Assembly (NCBI RefSeq): GCF_037042905.1
Contig: NC_087255.1
Location: 31,310,001 to 31,374,000, forward strand
DNA length: 64,000 nucleotides
Origin: Lytechinus pictus
Taxonomy: Eukaryota
Direction: 5' to 3'
Every line of letters starts with the position of its first letter. Within the stretch, counting starts at the first letter, position 1. Positions 3,139 to 47,890 of this stretch are shown piece by piece. The notes beneath the pieces were generated by a model. It was not told the DNA's origin. It saw only the letters and a list, made by a program, of their open reading frames with translations, and searched no databases. Made by a program: the position numbers and the translations under genes.

Positions 3139-3796
3139 NNNNNNNNNNNNNNNNNNNNNNNNNNNNNNNNNNNNNNNNNNNNNNNNNNNNNNNNNNNNNN
3201 NNNNNNNNNNNNNNNNNNNNNNNNNNNNNNNNNNNNNNNNNNNNNNNNNNNNNNNNNNNNNNNNNNNNNNNNNNNNNNNNNNNNNNNNNNNNNNNNNNNN
3301 NNNNNNNNNNNNNNNNNNNNNNNNNNNNNNNNNNNNNNNNNNNNNNNNNNNNNNNNNNNNNNNNNNNNNNNNNNNNNNNNNNNNNNNNNNNNNNNNNNNN
3401 NNNNNNNNNNNNNNNNNNNNNNNNNNNNNNNNNNNNNNNNNNNNNNNNNNNNNNNNNNNNNNNNNNNNNNNNNNNNNNNNNNNNNNNNNNNNNNNNNNNN
3501 NNNNNNNNNNNNNNNNNNNNNNNNNNNNNNNNNNNNNNNNNNNNNNNNNNNNNNNNNNNNNNNNNNNNNNNNNNNNNNNNNNNNNNNNNNNNNNNNNNNN
3601 NNNNNNNNNNNNNNNNNNNNNNNNNNNNNNNNNNNNNNNNNNNNNNNNNNNNNNNNNNNNNNNNNNNNNNNNNNNNNNNNNNNNNNNNNNNNNNNNNNNN
3701 NNNNNNNNNNNNNNNNNNNNNNNNNNNNNNNNNNNNNNNNNNNNNNNNNNNNNNNNNNNNNNNNNNNNNNNNNNNNNNNNNNNNNNNNNNNNNNNN
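3139..3796. other. Assembly gap (N run)
   Basis: Run of N. Confidence 1.
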
Positions 3797-13559: not shown

Positions 13560-13693
13560 NNNNNNNNNNNNNNNNNNNNNNNNNNNNNNNNNNNNNNNNN
13601 NNNNNNNNNNNNNNNNNNNNNNNNNNNNNNNNNNNNNNNNNNNNNNNNNNNNNNNNNNNNNNNNNNNNNNNNNNNNNNNNNNNNNNNNNNNNN
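13560..13693. other. Assembly gap (N run)
   Basis: Run of N. Confidence 1.
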
Positions 13694-19790: not shown

Positions 19791-20243
19791 TCATTCTTGA
19801 TATATACCATAAACAATGCCAGTGGCGTACAGGGAGCCGTTTTTGTAAGTATATTGGGCGTAAGAGTCAAATTTATCATTCCAAACACATTGACTTGCGG
19901 AACAGACATCTGCATGCTCTGTGGATCCAATTGTAACCATGGCGACGATTTTATAACGTGGGATCAGCAATTCCTTGACGCGATGCTTGATGACGTCGGC
20001 AAGCTCACGGCAGAGGACTGGACACTTTTGTGGGTCATAGGACTGTGACTCCAGCTGAGCGGTCAAGATATCCTCGACGATCTGTTTGGCGGCACCGACC
20101 ATGAACTTCTTGTCTGGTTCCATCTTGTAGGTGCATTCAAAGCGGACGGCTGGTCGGCCTGGCGCAGTGCTTGCGCCGCCTCTGGCGTCCATGGCGCTTC
20201 GTTGCGTCGATGCCGAATATTTGCTTCCTGCTGTCTGAGCCAT
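19791..20243 (-). CDS. Tctex-1 domain-containing dynein light chain (TCTEX1D1/DYNLT5-like), 150 aa, single coding exon
   Basis: TYKMEP..F....KQIVEDIL..QL....YDP..C..L...IK.RVKEL..PRYKIV..V.IG........S.CVW...DSYA.Y.YKNGSLYA..IVYGIYQE is the full Tctex-1 family signature; ATG in gacATGG context. Confidence 0.93.
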   Translation of the reverse strand: MAQTAGSKYSASTQRSAMDARGGASTAPGRPAVRFECTYKMEPDKKFMVGAAKQIVEDILTAQLESQSYDPQKCPVLCRELADVIKHRVKELLIPRYKIVAMVTIGSTEHADVCSASQCVWNDKFDSYAQYTYKNGSLYATGIVYGIYQE

Positions 20244-21153
20244 GTCTGCAAATCGATTTCCTTTTTATTCCAAAGAAATATAAATAGGCCTGGATGAAGA
20301 AGAAAGATTGATGACGTAAAGTCTGTGTTCAGTTCAAGCACAAATCCTACATTCAAACTTGTCTCGTTATAACTCAAGAAATCACATGCAATTATGATTT
20401 GGGCGGTTGCGACAGGTCCTAAAAAAGAGAGTATTCAACGAATGCAGATAGCTTGTAATGTTCGAACCATATCCTTTCAAAAGGTGCAAAATAGTGTTTT
20501 GTCGGCTGCAACAAGTACAATTGAGATTGATATTCCAGTCAAATGACTATGACATTGAGATTTAATCGGCATTAATTGAGAAAACACGATGTACTGGTGA
20601 GATACCGCAAGTTGACCTTATAAACTTGTAGGTTACACCGCATCAAGTCTGGAGTAAAAAAAAAAGGCGATTCCAACTTCTGGAGTAACCACAGTTGCAG
20701 ACATTCAAACATTCCTTTCCAGTCAGGTTCAATGTCTCCCGAATATTCCCTGAATTGGAATGATTTCTGGGGGAAGAAATTTTTTTTTGTGAATCCTCTG
20801 CGAACAGAAAGCGTCGCTGGCCGTGTGTTAGATATTTTCCGTTCGAATGCCTATCTGGTTTCCAAGCACATTTATCGATCGCTGATATCTTGTTCAGATG
20901 CCTTGATAGAAGAATAAGCGCTTAATCGCTTTCGCCGTCCTTTGTCAGCGTTGGACTAAGCTCTGAAAGAAAATGGGATAGACTCTAGAACAAATGAATA
21001 GGTTAGGCACGGTGGGGGCGAGGGGCTGTAATAGGGCACGACCCTAATGGCTCGGCAACTGCCAATATGACTCCAACTATACTATTCAATCTTCAGTGAA
21101 GCAGCGGGTCTCGCCATCAGTCACTGGAATAAGTAGAAATATGTGTGATATTT

Positions 21154-30834: not shown

Positions 30835-32523
30835 CTAACATACAGCAAAATTACTTGAATGGTTAGCAGGCAATGCAGCTATATTTCGGTCTACCCCGAT
30901 TCCTATGCAGGGATCGTCCGGCCGAAATTCCTTGCCGGGCGGCAGTGGATGATTGTTGTTTAGCGGAGGTGAAGGTGGCGGCGACGGCGTGCTGGGCGGA
31001 TGTTGGGACCCTTGTGGCATTTGCGCCATTTGTTCAGGCGTGATGTACGGATCGGCTGCATTGTGGTTGGTGGTCTTTGGACCATCAGTCTTTTGTAGAG
31101 GCAGCACGTCTTGATGAGCAATATACCCGTTTGCTCTGACTTTTGGGAGTCCATTGGGTATGTGCTTGTTAGGGCTCGATATGCTCTCAGGCAAATCATT
31201 CTTATGATCACTTTTTGGATCTGCTAAACTTGGTTGCTTTTGAGGGAGAGATTGTAACTCTGCTTCTGTGATGTAGCCTGAGGGGTTCTTCACGGGGGTG
31301 TTCTGTAAATCTGCAGGAGTGACTGCTTCCTTTGATACATACCCAGAATCTACTGGTACATGAGGGTCTGGCTTTGTGAAAGACGCATCCACTTTCTGAG
31401 GCCGATGATGTGGGACAGAGCTAGAAGGCGATTCTGCTAATCCAAGTGTGCTATAAGCTTCTCCATCTGTCAACGAGGAGTCACTCCCGCTCTGAGATTT
31501 GGAGTCTGCAAGGTTCTTGTGATCGCATTTCAGGTCTTTCTTGGGCATATCTGGGCTCACATGCTTGACAGGCGGGGGTGGTTTTGTGACTGGAGGGGAA
31601 GTGACATATCCTGATAGATCTGTCTTGGAGACCGGGTTAGGGTGGTTTCCAGGAGAGAGAGCAGTGGCGACAATGAACTCTTGTGGAGGTTGGATGCGAC
31701 CGCCCATGGAAACACTTGGCAAACTCATAGCCAATCCTTTGCTCTCTTGGTTGTTGGTTTCATTCCTCGGTTCAGTCTGCCTGGGTGTCCTCTCTCCTCT
31801 TGATTCTGTCGGGGATTGATTGGAGGAATCAGATGCCAACTGGGAGTAGTCGTTGTCTGTCTCGGAGCCTTGGGACAGACGTGCATATGCCAAGGGATCT
31901 TCAGATGGCAACGTTTCTACGCTAGTGATTGGAGTCAGGCCACTCATACCCAGTCGGTGGTAGCTAACCGTTGATTGGCTTCCAAAGGAAGCCTCACTCC
32001 TCTGGTCAGCGAGACCTCGGATTGGAGCTGGTGGTGTTGCACTAGCCTGTAGAGGGACCTGAGACAGCTGGGAATATCCCTCACTGCCATCGCTCATATA
32101 CTGAGCCGCTGCTTCCTTGGATAACATCGGGGTTGAGCAATCTGCACCGTCAACCTCAGCGATGCGGGAGTAGGTCACTGAACCATCGCAGTCAGCTCCA
32201 AACACGGTGTCTTCCTCCTCGTAGTCATCGCTCATGATGCGCATCACGTGCTTTGCAGGTGCTGAGGCCTTATCCTCGTCACTCTCGCTGTTACTACGGC
32301 TTCCAGTATTCTCTTGGACATATCGCAATTCATCAGTGAAGCCGTCCATATCATGGATTCCCTGGTCTGTGCTGCTATTTGTACTAGTACTCTCCTTAGA
32401 AGATGATCTCTCATACGGAAGCTGTAGGAGATTGGTAGTTGAACTGGCCTGACGAAGCGTGTCAAACTTCTCCCCCTCCGTACGCACGCTTAGAAGACGG
32501 CCCTGCAGCTGGAACTTTTCATC
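30835..32523 (-). CDS. Receptor exon 18: 562-aa S/P-rich cytoplasmic tail with many Tyr motifs, ending in TAG
   Basis: Long open frame (ORF 30835..32589), acceptor ttttgcAG at 32524-32525, phase 0. Confidence 0.9.
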   Translation of the reverse strand, partial: DEKFQLQGRLLSVRTEGEKFDTLRQASSTTNLLQLPYERSSSKESTSTNSSTDQGIHDMDGFTDELRYVQENTGSRSNSESDEDKASAPAKHVMRIMSDDYEEEDTVFGADCDGSVTYSRIAEVDGADCSTPMLSKEAAAQYMSDGSEGYSQLSQVPLQASATPPAPIRGLADQRSEASFGSQSTVSYHRLGMSGLTPITSVETLPSEDPLAYARLSQGSETDNDYSQLASDSSNQSPTESRGERTPRQTEPRNETNNQESKGLAMSLPSVSMGGRIQPPQEFIVATALSPGNHPNPVSKTDLSGYVTSPPVTKPPPPVKHVSPDMPKKDLKCDHKNLADSKSQSGSDSSLTDGEAYSTLGLAESPSSSVPHHRPQKVDASFTKPDPHVPVDSGYVSKEAVTPADLQNTPVKNPSGYITEAELQSLPQKQPSLADPKSDHKNDLPESISSPNKHIPNGLPKVRANGYIAHQDVLPLQKTDGPKTTNHNAADPYITPEQMAQMPQGSQHPPSTPSPPPSPPLNNNHPLPPGKEFRPDDPCIGIGVDRNIAALPANHSSNFAVC

Positions 32524-35500
32524 CTGCAAAAGCACAGATAGATTACAAAGTGAGATTATAAAGTGCTGATTTCTTTTATCACCTAACATTTATTCATGTA
32601 ACAGCAGGTATAAATCTCCTCAGAAGTATTTCTGATTGAAAGGGATGACCTCAATACAATGCTTTCAGAGAAAATACAAATGCTTCAATGCTCTCAGGGA
32701 CCTTCTAAACAAATCAGTTTTACATACACATAGAAATTATCTCTCTCTTTGGTACATATATTTTCTGACCTGTTACATTCACAAGATGGTTTCTGCAATC
32801 CCACACCCTACAATGTATGTGTTACATGGTAAATTCAACCATCTTGGGCAGAATTCCTTTTAAAAGTCAGAAAAATCACAATTGGATAATGGATGAACTC
32901 ATTTTTAAGAGAATCTTCAGGGCAAAAATCAATTGAGGCAAAGAGGAACTGGTTTAGATTTGAGCAGAGGAGCTATTGGTGGGGAAAGAGGAAATAGTCT
33001 ATAGTGTAATCCCCTCCCACTTGCATACATGTAGCATGACATCACGTTTCTATGCTCGTGCATACAAGTCACTAGAAAGATGGAAAAACTTTAAATATTC
33101 TTGAGACTTGAAATGCTCCTGATATTCTTGAAACTTTCCTATGTCTGTATTTCATTCCTCCCCTTGAATAACATGAATAGCATATAATCATAAGGTTTAT
33201 CAACAATTCATCCAGGATGATTTGACTTACATTGTGATCAAGAACTGCTTCAATGAAGTATGGATCCGGTGCTGGCTTGAAGAGATCTGACTGCTTCACC
33301 CAAATCAAGAAACAGAAGGCGATGATGACAACGAAACTTGGAAGGAGGATTGCAAGCACAATGGTGACCACAGGCACTGTTGTGAAAGGGACAAAACAAA
33401 CACAAAATGTGGCAAATGATGTAGTAGAAATTTGTAAGCGATGTAATTGGAACTGGCACCTGATGCAACTGAAGTTTGCAACATATGTAACTAGAATTTG
33501 TAATTGACACAACTAAAATTGGCAATTAATTGCATCTGAAATTTGCAAACGATGCAACTGAAATTTGCAACCAATTCAAATAATTTGCCATCGGTGTAAC
33601 TAAAATTGGCAATCAAAATTTGCAACTGATGCAACTGAAATTTGCAATGGATTCAAATAATTTTTTTTTAATTGATGCAACTAAAATCAGCAAACGATTG
33701 CAAATAAGTTTCACACTACACCCATATAGACAGCAGAAGAACAATAATACAAACACAGAACAGACTTCCCATCAAAACCATGCAAGGAAAATCTTTTTTA
33801 GGTAATAAGAAAAAATCCCCACCTTTATGTAAATTGCAGACTTCGAAAAGATGAGCAATGGACATGGTTCCGGCCAGGGGGATGCTATCGACCTCGTTCA
33901 CCGCAAAGACCTCAAAGTTGAAGAAGGTGGCCCCATCCACCAGATCACAGTCAATCTGAATGGTGGCAGAGGGTGTCAGGAGTGGTTCTGTTTCCATCCA
34001 TTCAACATCACTGTCTGCGGGTCTGTAGCGCACCATGTAGTAGTCTATAGGTCCGTTAGGTACCACTGGTCTACCCCAGTTAACTATCACAGTGTCTTGC
34101 GTCTCAAGGTGAACATCAACATTGGTAACCATTAACGGAGCTGTGGAATATTAAAAAAATGCTTTGAAGATCAGAATTCAGTTCTATAAAACCATGACAT
34201 TTAGGTCGTGGGTTTTCTCAACTTCCATGCATTAGATAGCACAGATAATTTTGAATACTTTGTTTAATATTATTGTCATTACTTTAGAAAATTTATGAAA
34301 TACTTCTTGCAAACTTCTTAAAATTGCTGTTCTGTCCAGACAAGCCATTGATCCGGACTGTACAAATGGGTATATCAGAAACCCTGAGCAAATGAAATTG
34401 TGACGTATACCTGTAATCCAAGCTACATAGGGGAAGTAACGAACTGATGGAGAGATTAAAGATTTTGAATGATGATGCTAAAAGGTCGGCTGCAGACGTA
34501 AATAATCCTATCTGATTGGTACAAGTCTGTGCTATCTAGATATCAAACGATAAACTTCAAATCCTTACTTACCACCGATATCTGTCATGACGCGTGTCGT
34601 AGCAGGCAGACTGCAAGCTAGGGATGGATCAGCATTGCTGCAAGCTTGAACATCAATGGTGTAATTCACGTATCCATTCACTGCCAAGGTTGCTGACTTA
34701 ACATCCAAAGACTGTACCTCATCATTGTACTTGATGATGTAGTTCTTGAAGACTCCATTCATCTGCTCTGGTGCTTCCCATACCAGTTGGATCACACTGT
34801 CATTGGAGAAGGTCAGGAGAAGGTCGCGAGGAGGGCTGGGCACTGCAAGTGAAGAGAGATAGGTGGAGATATTAGCTAGTATTATATAACATCAATTAAA
34901 AAAATGAATTAAAAATAATAATAGGTCTTCGTCTGCAAAGTGAAGAGAAACAATAAATAGACATACTTATATACATGTATATACACAATAAAAATGGGTA
35001 AACAAAATACAAAACATTAACAAAATATATAAAAGTGGAGGGACAAAAAAAAGATTCAAAGGTGTAAATAAGTTAAGAACCACATTACAAAACATCCCCA
35101 AGAGACCCAAATTTATCAAATTCACAACTGCTTTTTTTTTCCAAATGAAGTGAAGAATTAAGAGGAAACCCACTTCCTTGGCTGGTCTTGGCTTTCTTTA
35201 GACTTGAAGGAGGCCCTCTGGCAGCAGACGTGGAGGCAGCGATCCTTACTACGTACTCAGTGAATGGCTTCAATCCTGATATAGTTTCTGACAACGGCAA
35301 AGGGCTACCAGTCACATTGAGTTCCTGCTGCGTTCCATCTGAAGGAGGAATAGGTAAAGAATACAAAATACTTAGGACCATGTTTAGAAAATACTGCATA
35401 TGATTACCGGTATAATTTCTTCACAGTGGTGGTGATTTTTTTGGATTTCCAAAACTAAACACAGCAAAATGTTTACTTCTTTGTATACAAAAAATATGAT

Positions 35501-41500: not shown

Positions 41501-44500
41501 ACATGCATCTTTTTGTCTTCACATACCTTTTAAATGAAACAAGTCGTTGGTAGTAAGTTTGTACTTCACAACTCCACCAGTCTCGTCGTGCACTGATACA
41601 TTGTAGCCAAAGTTTGGACCTCGGTATTCAGTCACTGGTATCGCCTAAAAATTCAGAAAAAAAACATAAATTAAAATTGAAAACAGTAACAAAAATTTGT
41701 AGATCATTTTCATATAGCAAACATAAACATAATTCAAACCTGCACAGTCTGTATGTCATGACATGGGAATGCACTTCACAGAATTGCACACATTTTTTTT
41801 TTGATTACCCTGGTATACACCAAATACAGTAAACCTCTCATTCAGTGAGAATGTAATATTTTGAACAGAGTTAAAGACAAACGCCAGTTGTTGTAACAAT
41901 ATCAAATGATTTCATACAGAATCCAACAAAATAAACACCAAATTGTCTGTATGAATGAATAAAAAATATGTGCCACATAATTAAAAAAGAAATTGTATAA
42001 TGGCTGAGAAATAAGTAAAATAAGCACATCATGTCACCAAATGTTGGGTATTTATCCAAGCAATAATAATACACTGTCCCACATGTGCTTATCTGTGTAG
42101 GTGATCTTCAGTGCAATAGTTTTTCAGCTTAGATTTCATGATTTCACAAAGGTCAGTTTATGCAACTCTACCGGATCTAGATCCACGATGATATAGTGAC
42201 AATAAAACCTTGGCTTTACAGACTTTCTCATGAAATCAGTGTTTCTTCGCATGAGATCAGTATTTACGGTAACTACTTTTATTTATCTTTAATTTATCCC
42301 TATAAAAGAAGCTTATTTTACCTGCCATCCTACAACGACATCTCGAGTGTATGAGTTGGCATCCCCATTTACATTAACGACAGTGAGTGATCTCATGGTG
42401 GCACCAGGCTCTGTGGATGCAGGAAAAAAAACATGTAAAAGAATCCTGGATTATTTCACACTTTACGATTAAACATCAAAGAAACTATATGTGAGCTGAG
42501 TGTAGCCAACAGCTGGAACCAACACACAGCTGGATTACAAAGCAACATCAAGAAGAAATTGAGATGATTATTTTAACAGGAATTGTGTTTATACAGCTTC
42601 AAATATGTCATAGATTTGGGGATGTTTCACTAAAAGGTGAGTCAGACTAAAATCATGATTAAGGCCGAAGGGCACATGATATTTAACATGTAACCTTGAT
42701 ATTTATTGTGACGTTAAGTGTGTACAATGAGCAAAATCTGACTGGTGTGGTGATCAAGTTATATACAGCACATGCAAATAGAAATCAAAGAATGATTTCT
42801 AGTCAGGCTCAAATCTTTGTGAAACACTTCCCTGGGGCCTGCTTCACAAAAATTTCATGGTAACGTTATGGAAACTACCATGGTAACAGGGCTCAGCAGC
42901 CAATCAAAATCAAGGTTTCCATAGCAGTTTTCATAATGGCATGGTTATAGTTGTATTCTTTATGAAGCGGGCCCCAGATATGTATTTCTATTTCGATGGG
43001 CTATTGCTATATCATACCTTCGGCCATGGTTACTACTTCGATGGGCTCAGACCAGGTACCAAATGGGTTTCCATCATAATGGTCAACCAGGACGTCGTAG
43101 GCACAACTGACCCGGACAAAGTAAGTTGTATAAGGGTCAAGAGCTGAGATGATGTATTCTGTGTCTGTTCTGATACTATCCAAAGACACCTAAAATGAAC
43201 GAATAAAACAGATATTCATAACAATCAAAGGAATGTTTAGGAAGGATAGCTCCACTGCTAGAGCGGTGCTTTTGTGTTCCTGTAACCTGGGTTTGATAAC
43301 AAGGGCTAGTGCCCTTTGATAAGGTACATGTCTTGTACTTATAACCAGGGCTCCTTCTTACAAAGACAAGCAACTGATCCAATCAACCACAACTATGGAA
43401 AGCCAGCTACGCCAACATCTAGAATACATGTTTGTTCCAAACAATTTCTAGATATAACGACTCACACCTTTATCGTTGTATTGACAACTCAATGTCCTTG
43501 CTCTTTGTTTACAAAGGACATTGTGCAAATTTCTGGTAGGAAAAATTATTACAATGATGGATTTCCATATAACTGACGTTGATTGGATCAATTGTAACTC
43601 TTTGTAAGACGGGGCCCAGGTCTCTCAAAGAAGAAACTTCGGCTGCCAATTCTCTGATTACTTACTTAAAATAATTTTCATGGTTTCTTAGCAGTCAACA
43701 TTAAGATTTCTCACCTGAAGTTGAGACAATCGACTAGAGGCGTAACAATCAATGGCTTAATCGGTAACATCTTTTAACCTAGCTCGGTGCTTGAAGCTCC
43801 TTCAGCAGCCTTTTCACAATCTCAACACTAAAATCAACAACTCACGTTTAATCACTGAATGTATCCGGTTTCTCATTTTCTAAATTTCCTGTGTCAGTAT
43901 TCCTCATTCTGTACCAACTCCTATCATAATGTGATTTTCAAAAATCGGAATAATCGTCATCCTTAACTCATCTACTTACATTTTGCCATCCTTCCCCTTC
44001 TTTTTTGTACTGCAACCAGTAGTGCAACCCATAGGCAAGGCCAGTTCTGTGCCAATCAGAAGGTTGTTCCCAAGACATGGCAATCTTGCGTCGCTCAGTG
44101 ATCTCTGCTCTTACATTCCCTGGAGGGTTTGGCCGAACTACAAGTGAAAGATCAAGATAAGATTGAGTGATTAGTAAATGTATCAGATTAATAAGACAAG
44201 AAAACAGTTATTTAGATTTTTAAGAGAACTTAGGGTTGCAGTTCAAAGAAATTTTGCTCCAAAGCCATCATTTTCTTTAAATAATAAAATTATCTTGAAC
44301 TAATGTGGTGTCTTTTTGCAACTGCTGATATAGAACAAGCTCTAAAACACAAATCTGTCCAAAATTAAAACACAAGCTCTAAAACACAAATCTGTCAAAA
44401 ATTAACATGATTTTTCTTTTTTTATAAGTATAGACTATGGCATTGCAGAATTGATACTTTCAAGTCTAGAAGAAAACATTGTGGATAAGGGAGGGAAGAA

Positions 44501-47500
44501 TGGACAGAAATGAAATGAATGCCACCCATCCATTCACAGTCAAGGAAAGATTATATTATCTGCTGGTGAGAGAATATCAAAACAGAATAAAAGAATGTTT
44601 AAAAAGTGCAAGAACAGGGAAGCATTTCATGAAACAAAGAGTCAGTGATTTTCACTGACTATAGTTATAAGCTACTGAAATCCGTCCATCTGATTGGCTG
44701 TGAGTAAATAAGTTAGTGATAATCATTGACAAAACTTTTCATGAATGCTCCCAAAGTTATGCAGATGAATTTGTAGAGAAACCCTTTCCTCAGCTCCGAA
44801 TAAAATAGAGGTACGCAGACATTAGGGTTCACAGAGCTTTGCCATTGATCATAGGGCTGTGTATTATTGCATACTACATGATTATGCAATCAGTCATGCA
44901 AATCAGCTGTTCCATCAATAGTTTTGCAGGGATTCAACTCACAACTCTCTCACTAAAATATTTGGAATGCACCATGCAGGATAAAAACAGCCATAGGACC
45001 CTGCAACAGAAAGGTTTGCAGTGAATTGAAAGAACCACTCTGATTGGTTAATGGTCAGAGTTTTGAACAAAATGCACATTAAACGATGATCTTGATTGGT
45101 TATTTAGGGATTGATTGTAAACCTTTGTGTTATGGCCTTACCTTCTGAGTGTGGATCAAATTGTCTATTCAAATGTGAGGTACTATTGCCAAGGGGATTT
45201 TCGCTCACGACAAATATTTCTGTTTGGAAGGGATCGTCGATAACTCGGCAAAAGTTGTTCTCTCGTTCAGGATGGCAGGGTAGAATTTCTCTGTTTCCAT
45301 CAACATAGGGTCTGTAACATGACAACAAAGAAAACATGCATGTTGTTTTGTTTGTTTGTTTGTGACAACCTCAGTACTAAAATATTAATAGCTCTTACTT
45401 GTTTGATTATTAACCCTACTTTAAATGGGTTATTTCAGACCAGGATGCGGCAGGGGGGGGGGGGGCGTCAATCGACTGCCTTTCAGATCTCGGCTGCTGA
45501 TTGCACAATCACCACAAAAATTTGCACATGTTCACGACAATACTGAATAGTAAAATTTTCAAAAAATTAATTTCTTATATTTCCTCACTAATTAATCATA
45601 CTAATAAGCATATGAAATGTGCTCTAAATATGGTTTTTGTGTATGCCTCTGCCTTATACTCACTTATATAGCAATCAGAATGCAAATTTTTGGGTGAAAA
45701 TATCAATTTTTACATTTTTTTTTAATTGCCAAAATGCAATTAACTTTAAATGTAGCTCATTTATTTTTAATTATGTATTTTTTTTTTTACCTTTGATTAT
45801 TATTGTTTTTTCGATGAAATTGTTAGGCACTCTTTTGCAATCATGAATAGAATAAAATAAATCCACTTAAACCAGCAAAAGTATTTTTTAAAAAAATTAC
45901 ACTAAATATGTTTTTTGGGTTGAAAACACCCTTTGCATTGACTTTGTACACAAAATCATGTTTATAAGCAATTTTGGGTCTGGCATGCACTTACAAAATG
46001 ATGTATATTTCAGAACTGCATACTTAGGGTTAAAGGTTTGGAAATATAGGTCTTAAAAGCAGTTGATGTTCTCAGTCTTTGGTGAAACTGAATTTCTTGT
46101 GCATTTCTTTAATTTGGGAGTCCATCGGTCTGAAAGAAATTTTAAGAGTGACCGGCGGCATGATTCAGTAACCATGGGATCGTCCGCTTCGACTCAGCAC
46201 TACTAGTAACGTGATTAGATTATCTGGATCATTATGGAAAATTGAAAGGGAAAAATAACTGAATTTCAATGAATTGAGTTGATTTGAACTTAACTGAATT
46301 GAATATAAATAAAATCTAATGAATTGAAATGAAATGAATTACAATATTTCTCCTTACCCTTGATAGTACAAGGTATCTACAGTCTTGAGATTGGTCGGGC
46401 GGCCATCCTCCCACTCACACCAGTACTCATTGATGTTGGTAGTGTAACAGTTTAAATTCTCTACTGGCTCCGGTGGTACTACATACAAAAAAAATATCAT
46501 GTAAAGTTACTTTCTTTTAATGTATTCTTTCAACACCCCCCCCCCCCCTCTTCTCAACAATGAAAATAAAGGAATCATGTATCATTGAATTTGTGAAATT
46601 ATTAAATCCTTTGTTAAAACTCTTATCCATTTATAAACAAAAAAGAAAAACAGTTCTTGGCAATATGATTCTCTTTGAAACTGTCATGTTTTTTAATTCT
46701 CCACAGTGCCCTAAAATACATGTATTCATTGCTCGACAGAGGGCACTATATCAATGCACCACATCTGAACTATCTTACATTTATACATAAAGAACATAAT
46801 CATCAAAGCATACTCACATCCCACGTGCACTGTGGCCGATGCCTCTAAAAAATCGAAAAAGCTATCACCGGGGAAGGAACAGTAGTATGTGCCTTTGTCG
46901 TCGAAGAGAGCTTCTTGGATGTGAAGACGGGCAACTGTGTCATTAAGCACAGAGTGGGGATGGTGATCTATGGCTTTGTCATAGTCTTTGATCCAGACAA
47001 CGTCAGCTGCCGTTAGGTTGGTGCTGGCAATGTCAATTATACAGTGGATAGTGTGGTTGTCACCCCTATGTAGAATCGCAAAATCTTCTAAGACGGTAGC
47101 TGCAACAGAAGAAATACATTCATTACCTGAAGGCCTGACTCGTAACTGTTTTTTTAACAGAATTATGATAGCAAAGTTACCATAGTTGTAACTCTTTGAC
47201 ATTGAATAAAACCTAATCGAAAGCTGTAAACTCACAAGGAAATTATATTAACCTGTGACCCTGACATCAAACAAAAATACATACACAAACCTTAAACAAG
47301 ACCAAACCTCACCCACAAAAACCTCCCCAAAAAGAGATCTAAAAAACCCATTAACCAAAGTATCCCATAAACATTAAATACAATTACAAACCAAGTGCAT
47401 GTCTAAAGGAATGTGTAATAATTCCTGCTTTCTTGACTCTGAAAAATAGATGTCTGCAAATTTCAGAGTCAAGGGAATATTCCTTGTTTTCTTGGTATGT

Positions 47501-47890
47501 TCCAACTTGATCAAAATCTTGTCAAGGAAAAATAAATGGACAATAATACTTGTACATTTCATGGATGTTGAGATGTGAAATGTGCCTTTTCAGTAACTTG
47601 TGGAGAAGGTTTTTCTCAACTGGGTCTAACAATTATGATTTCAGCAGTCATTTGAACAGCAAGTTAAATGTTTTGACTCAGATATAACATAAACCTAACA
47701 CATAGCTTGAGGTCATAACTTAATACAATGTGAAACACTATAGAGTAAGCCCAACCATGAGCAAGCTCAACCATCAACAAAGCCACGTCCTAACATTATA
47801 ATGTAACAGTTTGAACCTACCTGTTATTGCACCAGAGACTGAGATGAGGGCACACAAGCAGATACAGGTTATCCAGACAGAATGCGCCAT
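30835..47890 (-). CDS. Class I cytokine receptor, gp130/Domeless-like signalling chain; spliced CDS of 18 exons, 1469 aa (SP-Ig-CHR-5xFN3-TM-Box1-long tail)
   Basis: Hand-spliced exons 47821-47890, 46818-47099, 46358-46478, 45142-45311, 43980-44137, 43018-43189, 42322-42410, 41527-41644, 40130-40177, 38041-38142, 37080-37221, 36614-36759, 35866-36069, 35174-35338, 34573-34842, 33823-34140, 33231-33376, 30835-32523 total 4410 nt in one open frame with GT-AG junctions. Motifs GLPPEPVENLNC..YWCEWEDGRPTNL and VRPNPP closely recall gp130 GLPPEKPKNLSC..MRCEWDGGRETHL and VKPNPP; also YFVRVSC...FGTWS and a PxP Box1. Confidence 0.9.
33231..33376 (-). CDS. Receptor exon 17: transmembrane helix and Box1-like motif
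   Basis: VVTIVLAILLPSFVVIIAFCFLIWV then KQSDLFKPAPDP (cf. gp130 IWPNVPDP); donor GTAAGT; phase 1-0. Confidence 0.9.
33428..33712. repeat. Degenerate ~21-bp minisatellite (gatgcaactgaaatttgcaac) in the intron before the TM exon
   Basis: Repeated gcaactgaaatttgcaa / gtaactaaaattggcaa units. Confidence 0.75.
33823..34140 (-). CDS. Receptor exon 16: membrane-proximal FN3 domain
   Basis: VIVNWGRPVVPNGPIDYYMVRY...FNFEVFAVN; donor GTGGGG; phase 1-1. Confidence 0.88.
34573..34842 (-). CDS. Receptor exon 15: complete FN3 domain
   Basis: PSPPRDL...IQLVWEAPEQMNGVFKNYIIKY...NYTIDVQAC; donor GTAAGT; phase 1-1. Confidence 0.9.
35174..35338 (-). CDS. Receptor exon 14: FN3 second half
   Basis: ETISGLKPFTEYVVRIAASTSAARGPPS; donor GTGGGT; phase 1-1. 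Confidence 0.88.
35866..36069 (-). CDS. Receptor exon 13: FN3 first half
   Basis: GPSGSPQALRV...LLLSWEEVPVNQRNGEIQFYTIIYC; donor GTAAGT; phase 1-1. Confidence 0.9.
36100..36255. repeat. (ACTACA/ACTGCA)n degenerate microsatellite
   Basis: Visible directly. Confidence 0.8.
36614..36759 (-). CDS. Receptor exon 12: FN3 second half
   Basis: HEITNLEAYTSYRVSLKTVNKRGPS; donor GTAAGT; phase 2-1. Confidence 0.9.
37080..37221 (-). CDS. Receptor exon 11: FN3 first half
   Basis: VPDKPEDLRVVTKTASSLQVSWEPP...LRYELEW; donor GTAAGC; phase 1-2. Confidence 0.9.
38041..38142 (-). CDS. Receptor exon 10: FN3 end
   Basis: LDRFKRLTVYVTPYNDVGPGVNKGQTTLQDETT; donor GTGAGT; phase 1-1. Confidence 0.87.
40130..40177 (-). 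CDS. Receptor exon 9: 48-nt microexon (EISRPSGAHDVRANLT)
   Basis: Acceptor tttAG, perfect donor GTAAGT, open in phase 1-1, locally GC-rich inside an AT-rich intron. Confidence 0.7.
40588..40738. mobile_element. Harbinger-type MITE; related copies at ~25659-25810, ~28809-28930 and ~44996-45137
   Basis: gggcccctaacacagagctt ... aacctttgtgttacaggatcc termini. Confidence 0.6.
41527..41644 (-). CDS. Receptor exon 8: FN3 middle
   Basis: AIPVTEYRGPNFGYNVSVHDETGGVVKYKLTTNDLFHLK; donor GTATGT; phase 0-1. Confidence 0.85.
41871..42292 (+). mobile_element. Kolobok-like non-autonomous element (intronic copy)
   Basis: TTAA-flanked; homologous to 23986-24389. Confidence 0.75.
42322..42410 (-). CDS. Receptor exon 7: FN3 start
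   Basis: EPGATMRSLTVVNVNGDANSYTRDVVVGWQ; acceptor ccacAG, donor GTAAAA; phase 1-0. Confidence 0.82.
43018..43189 (-). CDS. Receptor exon 6: C-terminal CHR domain with WSXWS-equivalent FGTWS
   Basis: EYIISALDPYTTYFVRVSC...NPFGTWSEPIEVVT; phase 0-1, donor GTATGA. Confidence 0.9.
43349..43616 (+). mobile_element. Harbinger-type MITE, TSD CAG
   Basis: CAG+ggctccttcttacaaag ... ctttgtaagacggggcc+CAG. Confidence 0.8.
43980..44137 (-). CDS. Receptor exon 5: C-terminal CHR domain, first half
   Basis: VRPNPPGNVRAEITERRKIAMSWEQPSDWHRTGLAYGLHYWLQYKKEGEGWQN; donor GTAAGT; phase 1-0. Not in the ORF track. Confidence 0.9.
44617..44752. mobile_element. Harbinger-type MITE
   Basis: gggaagcatttcatgaaa ... 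tttcatgaatgctccc TIRs. Confidence 0.6.
45142..45311 (-). CDS. Receptor exon 4: N-terminal CHR domain, second half (second Cys pair)
   Basis: PYVDGNREILPCHPERENNFCRV...IFVVSENPLG (cf. gp130 VWVEAENALG); phase 2-1, donor GTAAGG. Confidence 0.88.
45414..46029. mobile_element. piggyBac-like non-autonomous element
   Basis: TTAA+CCCTA ... TAGGG+TTAA termini; the TIRs are short, so pairing of the two ends is tentative. Confidence 0.55.
46358..46478 (-). CDS. Receptor exon 3: N-terminal CHR FN3 domain, first half (C-x9-CxW)
   Basis: LPPEPVENLNCYTTNINEYWCEWEDGRPTNLKTVDTLYYQG; donor GTAAGG; phase 1-2. Not in the ORF track. Confidence 0.9.
46818..47099 (-). CDS. Receptor exon 2: Ig-like domain
   Basis: HTIHC...VVWIK...ARLHI...DDKGTYYC (Ig Cys/Trp and DxGxYxC); acceptor ttgcAG, donor GTGAGT; 282 nt, phase 1-1. 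Confidence 0.9.
47821..47890 (-). CDS. Receptor coding exon 1: signal peptide MAHSVWITCICLCALISVSGAIT
   Basis: ATG in aagATGG context, hydrophobic core, donor GTAGGT at 47820, phase 1 matching the next exon. Not in the ORF track. Confidence 0.85.

What the first reader, a model, noticed from the sequence alone, without database searches (positions are those of the whole stretch)
31030..31615. Five repeated Y-[VI]-[TSA] motifs in the distal tail and no YxxQ
Seen: SGYVTS (Tyr ~31607), SGYVSKEAV (~31340), SGYITEAEL (~31274), NGYIAHQDV (~31124), DPYITPEQM (~31046); no YxxQ anywhere in the tail. Known: gp130 recruits STAT3 through YxxQ, whereas from memory growth-hormone receptor STAT5-associated sites include YITTESL and GYVSTDQL. 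Inference: a gp130-like ectodomain coupled to a GHR/STAT5-like docking array, which would fit an ancestral STAT5-like invertebrate STAT.
Basis: partly seen in the sequence, partly recalled or inferred. Interest (0 to 1): 0.7.

Follow-up and report, generated by a model that had tools for sequence, protein, structure and literature searches.

The report
Sea urchin cytokine receptor docking tyrosines
The tail of a sea urchin gp130-like cytokine receptor carries five strictly conserved Gly/Pro-Tyr-Val/Ile sites that look like the urchin STAT protein's own activation site, so they are probably where STAT docks, although binding has not been tested.

Summary
The last exon (window 30838-32523, minus strand) of a transcribed Lytechinus pictus gene holds five [GP]-Y-[VI]-[TSA] sites at the stated codons. 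Shuffles give 5 observed against 0.3 expected (P<1e-5). There is no YxxQ, but only 0.8 is expected, so its absence alone says little.

The ectodomain is gp130-like (profile against gp130 D1-D3, E 2e-27). NCBI's name "sidekick-2-like" is a misnomer.

All five Tyr and the preceding Gly/Pro are invariant in four echinoid lineages, where only 24% of distal positions are invariant. Position +1 is always V/I/L and +2 varies, so the conserved core is [GP]-Y-[VI]. Other urchins have a sixth site, which is Y→C in Lytechinus. Brittle stars carry four G/P-Y-V-P sites.

The genome has one detected STAT, with an SH2 closest to STAT5, and a JAK2-like JAK. The STAT's own activation tyrosine sits in G-G-Y-V-P-T, the same core as the receptor sites.

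Best reading (about 0.5): JAK-phosphorylated docking sites for the STAT5-like STAT. Binding is untested. The proximal YxxL/I cluster also fits a published STAT5 consensus. The co-folding job gave no answer. The scan holds a withheld report on an overlapping stretch.

The parts
30838..32523 (-). Last coding exon: the 562-residue cytoplasmic tail after Box1. Stop codon at 30835-30837.
   Evidence: Open frame. Acceptor AG at 32525-32524. RNA-seq joint 32522|33230 and continuous coverage. 100% identical to residues 892-1453 of P0001. No Pfam domain. AlphaFold mean pLDDT 39, with 523 of 594 residues below 50.
31597..31614 (-). Site 1, S-G-Y-V-T-S (Tyr codon 31608-31606).
   Evidence: G-Y-V-T is invariant in Lytechinus, Strongylocentrotus, the unnamed urchin and Diadema. 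Absent from the brittle-star alignment.
31330..31347 (-). Site 2, S-G-Y-V-S-K (Tyr codon 31341-31339).
   Evidence: G-Y is invariant and +1 is V/I. The other urchins read G-Y-V/I-P-K/N-D, which is the same G-Y-V-P as the STAT's own site.
31264..31281 (-). Site 3, S-G-Y-I-T-E (Tyr codon 31275-31273).
   Evidence: G-Y is invariant, +3 E is invariant, and +6 is L/M. A local pLDDT bump and short helix follow directly after the Tyr. Resembles GHR Y-I-T-T-E-S-L.
31114..31131 (-). Site 4, N-G-Y-I-A-H (Tyr codon 31125-31123).
   Evidence: N-G-Y is invariant and +1 is V/I. The other urchins read N-G-Y-V-T/S-S/K. Highest pLDDT block of the distal tail, 69.
31036..31053 (-). Site 5, D-P-Y-I-T-P, followed by E-Q-M-A-Q-M-P (Tyr codon 31047-31045).
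   Evidence: P-Y is invariant, +1 is I/L, and +4 E and +5 Q are invariant. Resembles GHR G-Y-V-S-T-D-Q-L.
30901..30915 (-). Lost sixth site: D-P-C-I-G in Lytechinus (Cys codon TGC at 30909-30907), where S. purpuratus, the unnamed urchin and Diadema have D/E-P-Y-V-G.
33230..33376 (-). Transmembrane plus Box1-like exon (hydrophobic span, then ..LFKPAPDPYF..).
   Evidence: Exon ends from spliced RNA reads and sequence. gp130 has ..IWPNVPDPSK.. at the same place.
31444..32178 (-). Context: six proximal Y-[SAH]-x-[LI] sites (YSRI, YSQL, YHRL, YARL, YSQL, YSTL). This second class of tail tyrosines is the subject of another note of the scan.
   Evidence: 6 observed against 0.33 expected, and no shuffle reached 6. 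All are conserved in echinoids.
42316..47890 (-). Context: signal peptide, Ig-like domain and cytokine-binding module exons of the same gene.
   Evidence: Exon matches in the own-genome search. Profile against the PDB: gp130 residues 11-304, E 2.3e-27. Weak Pfam hits to EpoR_lig-bind, IL6Ra-bind and LIFR_D4.

Best explanation
The gene encodes the gp130-like class I cytokine receptor of the sea urchin Lytechinus pictus. Its long, disordered tail carries two classes of conserved tyrosines. The five distal [GP]-Y-[VI] sites (six in other urchins) are most likely phosphorylated by the receptor-bound JAK. They would then serve as docking sites for the SH2 domain of the single STAT5-like STAT. That STAT's own activation tyrosine lies in the same G-Y-V-P context, so one SH2 pocket could read both the receptor and the partner STAT. 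Shown here: the motifs, their conservation, the receptor class, transcription, the presence of a JAK and a STAT5-like STAT, and the likeness of the motifs. Inferred: phosphorylation, SH2 binding and signalling.
For: (1) The motifs are not chance: 5 observed against 0.31 expected, P<1e-5.

(2) Tyr is the best conserved residue type of the tail, 0.98 against 0.65 overall. In the distal tail only 24% of positions are invariant across four echinoid lineages. All ten -1/0 positions of the five sites are invariant (about 5e-7 if positions were independent), and +1 is always V/I/L.

(3) Brittle-star tails align poorly in this region, yet they hold four [GP]-Y-[VIA]-P sites against 0.04 expected.

(4) The receptor class fits: gp130 D1-D3 at E 2e-27, a Box1-like P-A-P-D-P after the membrane span, and no kinase domain.

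(5) The partners exist. A JAK FERM exon matches JAK2 best, E 4e-15. One STAT locus was found, whose SH2 exons match STAT5A/B best (E 1.4e-12 and 3e-13), ahead of STAT6 and STAT1/2/3.

(6) The STAT's own Tyr exon, which has clean splice sites, encodes G-D-G-G-Y-V-P-T-S. Vertebrate STAT activation sites are [GP]-Y-[VIL]-[KP] (PMC3078918; PMC13272300).

(7) G-Y recurs at positions that I recall as the STAT-docking tyrosines of vertebrate receptors: gp130 GYRHQ and GYMPQ, LIFR GYKPQ and GYRPQ, IL-4R GYKAF, GYKPF and GYQEF, IL-12Rb2 GYLPS, GHR GYVST. The sequences are printed in PMC7444064. Purified JAK2, by contrast, prefers Asp/Glu at -1.

(8) All five sites fit the review's STAT5 pattern Y[VLTFIC].. 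and none fits Y..Q.

(9) The only pLDDT bumps in the otherwise disordered distal tail sit at sites 3, 4 and 5, as is usual for short binding motifs.
Against: There is no biochemical evidence of phosphorylation or binding. The STAT5 pattern is loose. At +3 these sites have S, K, E, H and P, not the hydrophobic residue of the classical EPOR-type pYxxL STAT5 site, whereas the six proximal YxxL/I sites do fit that consensus. Drosophila Domeless has YxxQ as its putative STAT92E site. The likeness to the STAT's own site rests on three or four residues. The co-folding job (split SH2 plus a site-3 peptide, no phosphate) scored 0.02, which the tool says is no evidence either way. Orthologs come from only two echinoderm classes.
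Confidence: 0.5

Rival explanations
1. The five sites are phosphotyrosine docking sites for SH2 proteins other than STAT, for example an SHP2/corkscrew-type phosphatase, a SOCS protein or an adaptor.
For: Tyr and the flanking positions are conserved, which says only that the sites matter, not who reads them. Beta-branched V/I at +1 is also favoured by SHP2-type SH2 domains (my own knowledge). Site 5 (Y-I-T-P) has Pro at +3.
Against: The sites lack the +3 V/I/L of ITIM/SHP2 sites, the N at +2 of Grb2 sites, and the M at +3 of PI3K sites. The review's SOCS pattern pY[AFILVWY].[AFILVWY] is not met. The invariant Gly/Pro at -1 is typical of STAT-related sites and is not known to me as a requirement of those other SH2 domains.
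Confidence: 0.22
2. STAT docks on the proximal YxxL/I cluster (the classical pYxxL STAT5 consensus). The distal [GP]-Y-[VI] array does something else, such as acting as a JAK substrate sink or as a mimic of the STAT tail that tunes signalling.
For: Six Y-[SAH]-x-[LI] sites against 0.33 expected, all conserved. pYxxL is cited as the STAT5 consensus for group 1 receptors.
Against: Three of the six are ITIM-like (V/L-x-Y-x-x-I/L), and YSTL resembles gp130 Y759 YSTV. From my own knowledge that gp130 site recruits SHP2 and SOCS3 and lies proximal to the STAT sites. By that analogy the proximal class is more likely inhibitory or a sorting signal.
Confidence: 0.12
3. The sites act without phosphorylation, for example as hydrophobic anchor points for a partner that is not an SH2 domain, or as sorting signals.
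For: The sites lie in a disordered tail and have local pLDDT bumps, which fits any short linear motif.
Against: They do not fit the AP2 signal Y-x-x-hydrophobic. Tyr is never replaced by Phe at any of the five sites in seven orthologs. Among the other tail tyrosines only one, the first, is Phe in Diadema, which argues that the hydroxyl matters.
Confidence: 0.08
4. The repetition is a chance product of a low-complexity tail.
For: The tail is rich in Ser and Pro.
Against: Shuffle P<1e-5. Invariance across four echinoid lineages. A parallel array in brittle stars.
Confidence: 0.01

Closest known systems
Human gp130 (IL6ST)
   Same: Ig-like D1 plus cytokine-binding module, with profile E 2e-27. 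FN3 stalk, single membrane span, Box1 with ..P-D-P.., and a long disordered tail. gp130 has a Y-S-T-V/L-type site and then a distal array of four tyrosines, two of them G-Y. The urchin Y-S-T-L site lies between sites 1 and 2.
   Different: gp130's distal sites are YxxQ (STAT3). Here there is no YxxQ in any of seven orthologs, and the sites are [GP]-Y-[VI]. There are five Pfam FN3 stretches, and a scan note counts five FN3 after the binding module against gp130's three. The WSxWS motif is reduced to ..G-T-W-S-E...
Human growth hormone receptor, distal tail (sites I recall as Y566 and Y627)
   Same: D-I-Y-I-T-T-E-S-L and C-G-Y-V-S-T-D-Q-L share Y-[VI]-[ST]-x-[DE]-x-[LM] with urchin sites 3 to 5. 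That these are STAT5 sites of GHR is from my own knowledge.
   Different: GHR has a short ectodomain with a single binding module. The rest of the tails is not alignable. The likeness covers about seven residues and was noticed after the fact.
Drosophila Domeless
   Same: An invertebrate gp130-like receptor that works through one JAK and one STAT.
   Different: Domeless has a YxxQ as its putative STAT92E site (PMC4751595). The urchin receptor has none.
IL-12 receptor beta-2 (G-Y-L-P-S) and STAT4 (G-Y-V-P-S)
   Same: A vertebrate case in which a receptor tail site looks like the STAT's own activation site. Here the receptor's G-Y-V-P/T matches the STAT's G-Y-V-P-T. That the IL-12Rb2 site docks STAT4 is from my own knowledge.
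   Different: IL-12Rb2 has one such site rather than an array of five or six.
Sidekick (the name given by NCBI's pipeline)
   Same: Only the presence of Ig and FN3 domains.
   Different: Searches show one Ig domain, a gp130-type binding module, five Pfam FN3 stretches and a docking-type tail. From my own knowledge, Sidekick has six Ig and thirteen FN3 domains. The name is a misnomer.

Membership tests
Class I cytokine receptor, gp130-type (tall) subfamily | N-terminal Ig-like domain plus cytokine-binding homology region homologous to gp130 D1-D3 | tested here: met
   A profile of four echinoid N-termini hits gp130 residues 11-304 at E 2.3e-27. CRLF1, CNTFR, LEPR, LIFR and IL-12Rb2 follow.
Class I cytokine receptor, gp130-type (tall) subfamily | [quoted passage not shown] | tested here: met
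   C128, C138, C170 and C179 are invariant in four echinoids.
Class I cytokine receptor, gp130-type (tall) subfamily | WSxWS motif at the end of the binding module | tested here: inconclusive
   Only ..F-G-T-W-S-E-P.. is present, with W313 and S314 invariant. The first W-S is missing.
Class I cytokine receptor, gp130-type (tall) subfamily | Single membrane span, proline-rich Box1, no kinase domain | tested here: met
   Exon 33230-33376 holds a hydrophobic span and ..KPAPDP... The tail has no Pfam domain.
STAT5-type docking site (Y[VLTFIC].. of PMC7444064) | Sequence pattern | tested here: met
   All five sites fit. The review itself calls the pattern promiscuous.
STAT5-type docking site (Y[VLTFIC].. 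of PMC7444064) | Phosphorylation by JAK and binding of the STAT SH2 domain | not testable with these tools
   The co-folding job gave no answer. No phospho-data are at hand.
STAT3-type docking site (YxxQ) | Sequence pattern | tested here: not met
   Zero YxxQ in each of seven orthologous tails. About 0.8 is expected per tail.
ITIM / SHP2-type site ([ILVS]-x-Y-x-x-[ILV]) | Sequence pattern at the five distal sites | tested here: not met
   Position +3 is S, K, E, H or P. Three proximal sites do fit.
AP2 sorting signal (Y-x-x-hydrophobic) | Sequence pattern at the five distal sites | tested here: not met
Sidekick | Six Ig and thirteen FN3 domains (domain counts from my own knowledge) | tested here: not met
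   One Ig domain, a binding module and five Pfam FN3 stretches. The best solved relatives are gp130-family receptors.

The most novel reading that the evidence does not exclude
The echinoderm receptor preserves an early mode of STAT recruitment. The receptor tail carries repeated copies of the STAT's own activation-loop motif (G-pY-V-P-like), so a single SH2 specificity serves both docking and dimerisation. On this reading, YxxQ and the other vertebrate docking codes are later specialisations, and the GHR sites are survivors of the old code.
Probability: 0.2. Interest if true: 0.7.

Novelty: new variant of a known kind. Interest (0 to 1): 0.5.

Why it matters
A 2012 survey stated that the sea urchin has no apparent cytokine receptor signalling system (PMC3296744). 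Here a transcribed gp130-like receptor, a JAK and a STAT5-like STAT sit in one urchin genome, and the receptor carries a clear, testable set of candidate docking tyrosines. The sites are few, short and invariant. From my own knowledge, Lytechinus pictus is a genetic model urchin. Together these make the question of how a non-vertebrate deuterostome couples a gp130-type receptor to its single STAT directly testable with peptides and Y-to-F mutants. The match between the receptor sites and the STAT's own activation site suggests a simple rule that could be checked across phyla. The library searches found no paper describing these motifs.

Tried and rejected
- **Co-folding.** I ran the STAT SH2 as three exon chains with a 35-residue site-3 peptide. 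The score was 0.02 and the tool's verdict was no answer. The set-up was poor (split domain, no phosphate, no alignments), so this is no evidence either way.
- **Full-length STAT protein.** None could be obtained as a tool reference, because the domain is split over exons and the length window of the protein search excludes it.
- **More orthologs.** A search with the ectodomain returned only generic FN3 proteins beyond the echinoids. A search with the brittle-star tail returned only itself. Starfish, sea cucumber, crinoid and hemichordate orthologs are therefore missing.
- **STAT_bind (PF02864) in the own genome.** No match, because of exon splitting. STAT_alpha, STAT_int and the SH2 exon did find the locus.
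- **PDB search with the 46-residue STAT Tyr exon.** Nothing found; the query is too short.
- **Rfam on the window.** Nothing found.
- **Paralogue search with the receptor N-terminus.** Only this gene was found.
- **Absence of YxxQ as evidence.** Rejected as weak, because 0.83 is expected by chance.
Rejected, because +2 is not conserved.

Full report
**What is there.** The minus strand of the window carries a multi-exon gene. Its last exon runs from 32523 down to 30838, with the stop at 30835-30837, and encodes a 562-residue tail. The tail is 100% identical to residues 892-1453 of a 1453-residue protein of the painted sea urchin Lytechinus pictus, XP_054764525. NCBI's pipeline calls this protein "sidekick-2-like". 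The window is G000:C11:31310001-31374000 of an 812-Mb genome, and the tail is single copy there.

Stranded RNA-seq reads cover the exon and its 3' untranslated region from the minus strand. Spliced reads join 32522|33230 and 33376|33823 with GT..AG ends. So the membrane-span exon (33230-33376) and the tail exon are joined as in the model.

**The observation.** The tail has 15 tyrosines. Five read S-G-Y-V-T-S, S-G-Y-V-S-K, S-G-Y-I-T-E, N-G-Y-I-A-H and D-P-Y-I-T-P, with Tyr codons starting at 31608, 31341, 31275, 31125 and 31047.

In 100,000 shuffles, Y[VI][TSA] is expected 0.31 times and never reached 5. With the preceding G/P the expectation falls to 0.05. Six further tyrosines form a second class, Y-[SAH]-x-[LI], against 0.33 expected. 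They lie mostly upstream.

**Receptor class.** A profile of the first 345 residues from four echinoids matches human gp130 over its Ig-like domain and cytokine-binding module (residues 11-304, E 2.3e-27). CRLF1, CNTFR, the leptin receptor, LIFR and IL-12Rb2 follow. Four cysteines of the binding module are invariant, while WSxWS is reduced to ..G-T-W-S-E...

Pfam finds five FN3 stretches and only weak hits to the cytokine-receptor binding-domain families. In the Diadema ortholog IL6Ra-bind passes its cut-off. After the membrane span comes ..L-F-K-P-A-P-D-P.., to be compared with gp130's ..W-P-N-V-P-D-P... The tail has no Pfam domain and is predicted disordered, with mean pLDDT 39. No paralogue of the N-terminal module was found in the genome. 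The gp130-like ectodomain is therefore supported, and the database name is a misnomer.

Orthologous tails were found in these species:
- L. variegatus.
- Strongylocentrotus purpuratus (79% identity).
- An unnamed urchin assembly (64%).
- Diadema setosum (53%).
- Two brittle stars: Amphiura filiformis, and an unnamed assembly that I take for a brittle star because its tail aligns closely with Amphiura's (32-34%).

Across four non-redundant echinoid lineages, Tyr is the best conserved residue type of the tail (0.98 against 0.65 overall). The only change is one Tyr to Phe at the first tail tyrosine in Diadema.

In the distal tail only 24% of positions are invariant. All five tyrosines and all five preceding G/P residues are invariant (about 5e-7 if positions were independent), and +1 is always V, I or L. 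Position +2 varies (T, P, G, S, A, D), so the conserved core is [GP]-Y-[VI], usually preceded by N or S. It is often followed by an acidic residue at +4/+5 and by V/M/L at +6.

S. purpuratus, the unnamed urchin and Diadema have a sixth site, D/E-P-Y-V-G. In both Lytechinus species it reads D-P-C-I-G, with TGC at 30909-30907. The brittle-star tails are hardly alignable here, yet each holds four [GP]-Y-[VIA]-P sites against 0.04 expected, the last at the very C-terminus. None of the seven tails has a YxxQ.

RNA reads show 14 variable coding positions in this exon. Ten are synonymous and none touches a motif core. The only pLDDT bumps in the distal tail lie at sites 3, 4 and 5.

**The likely partners.** Pfam STAT_alpha and STAT_int, and the SH2 exon itself, each find a single STAT locus at G000:C3, about 19.78-19.84 Mb. 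Its SH2 exons match STAT5A/B best in the PDB (E 1.4e-12 and 3e-13). STAT6 scores 1.8e-8 and 3e-12. STAT1/2/3 score about 2e-7 with the first exon and do not match the second.

The exon after the SH2 has a clean acceptor and donor and encodes ..G-D-G-G-Y-V-P-T-S-L-V.., the STAT's own activation tyrosine by position. A JAK FERM exon, best match JAK2 at E 4e-15, lies on C8.

**Why STAT docking is the best reading.** Published peptide tables give the vertebrate STAT activation sites:
- STAT5A: D-G-Y-V-K-P.
- STAT1: T-G-Y-I-K-T.
- STAT3: A-P-Y-L-K-T.
- STAT4: K-G-Y-V-P-S.
- STAT6: R-G-Y-V-P-A.

This gives [GP]-Y-[VIL]-[KP], the same core as the urchin receptor sites and the urchin STAT's own site. 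In other urchins site 2 reads G-Y-V/I-P-K/N, and the brittle-star sites read G-Y-V-P-N.

The receptor tails printed in PMC7444064 show G-Y at positions that I recall as their STAT-docking tyrosines:
- gp130: GYRHQ, GYMPQ.
- LIFR: GYKPQ, GYRPQ.
- IL-4R: GYQEF, GYKAF, GYKPF.
- IL-12Rb2: GYLPS.
- IL-23R: GYKPQ.
- GHR: GYVST.

Purified JAK2, in contrast, prefers Asp/Glu at -1. The invariant G/P is therefore better explained by STAT-related recognition than by kinase preference. I noticed this after the fact and treat it as a lead.

**Caveats.**
- Nothing here shows phosphorylation or binding.
- The review's STAT5 pattern is loose. The classical STAT5 consensus pYxxL is met by the proximal class, not by these five sites.
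- Three proximal sites are also ITIM-like, and Y-S-T-L resembles gp130's Y-S-T-V. This makes an inhibitory or sorting role for that class plausible but unproven.
- Domeless has YxxQ as its putative STAT92E site.
- The co-folding attempt gave no answer.
- Ortholog sampling stops at two echinoderm classes.

**Comparison and novelty.** The thing works like the distal tyrosine array of gp130 or GHR. It is a gp130-type receptor by ectodomain, but its docking code is not gp130's. A 2012 survey saw no cytokine receptor signalling system in the sea urchin. A 2026 survey lists an S. purpuratus "IL6R" in its tree but has no occurrence of YxxQ in its text. No paper in the library describes this array. 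I rate it a new variant of a known kind, of moderate interest.

Noticed in passing
window 31444-32178 (-): Six conserved Y-[SAH]-x-[LI] sites. Three fit the ITIM pattern (V-T-Y-S-R-I, V-S-Y-H-R-L, L-A-Y-A-R-L). Brittle stars keep Y-x-x-M/L versions. This is already the subject of another note of the scan.
   Followed up: partly
window 31441-31506 (-): A nearly invariant block D-S-K-S-Q-S-G-S-D-S-S-L-T-D-G-E-x-Y-S-T-L-G. The Y-S-T-L resembles gp130 Y759 (Y-S-T-V), and the serine run looks like a phospho-degron or kinase target.
   Followed up: no
window 32344-32406 (-) and 31657-31695 (-): Two tail blocks are conserved as far as brittle stars: S-S-K-E/D-S..S-T-D-Q-G-I-H-D-M-D and I/V-Q-P-x-Q/K-E-F-I-V-A. 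They have no tyrosine and no known motif.
   Followed up: no
window 30838-30852 (-) and 30931-30963 (-): The C-terminal end is conserved: ..F-A/T-V-C in urchins and ..T-M/V-V in brittle stars, which might be a PDZ ligand. There is also an invariant L-N-N-N-H/Q-P-L/M-P-x-G-K proline motif.
   Followed up: no
L007:5376-5438 (G000:C3, about 19838375): About 900 bases after the STAT's Tyr exon (L007:4440-4512) lies a near copy with its own AG and GT. It encodes ..A-P-N-V-P-A-S-L-V-S-H-I-P-H-T-P-G, with Asn in place of the activation Tyr. It is 63 nt long against 73 nt. It could be an alternative exon giving a Tyr-less STAT, or a decayed duplicate.
   Followed up: partly
L008:2317-2478 and L008:3612-3887 (G000:C3): Two near-identical STAT exons, S-L-P-V-V-V-(V/I)-(S/V)-H-G-N-Q-E-(C/S)-N-A-L-A-T.., lie 1.3 kb apart. 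They are possibly mutually exclusive exons.
   Followed up: no
window 33326, 33849, 33859, 33908, 32221-32479: All RNA reads differ from the assembly at several positions. For example, T>A at 33326 turns Ile into Phe in the membrane span, as in the NCBI protein. These are strain or haplotype differences, not editing.
   Followed up: partly
window 19794-20264 (-): A long open frame whose product looks like a Tctex-type dynein light chain, downstream of the receptor gene.
   Followed up: no
window 3139-3796 and 13560-13693: Runs of N (assembly gaps or masked). Left untouched.
   Followed up: no
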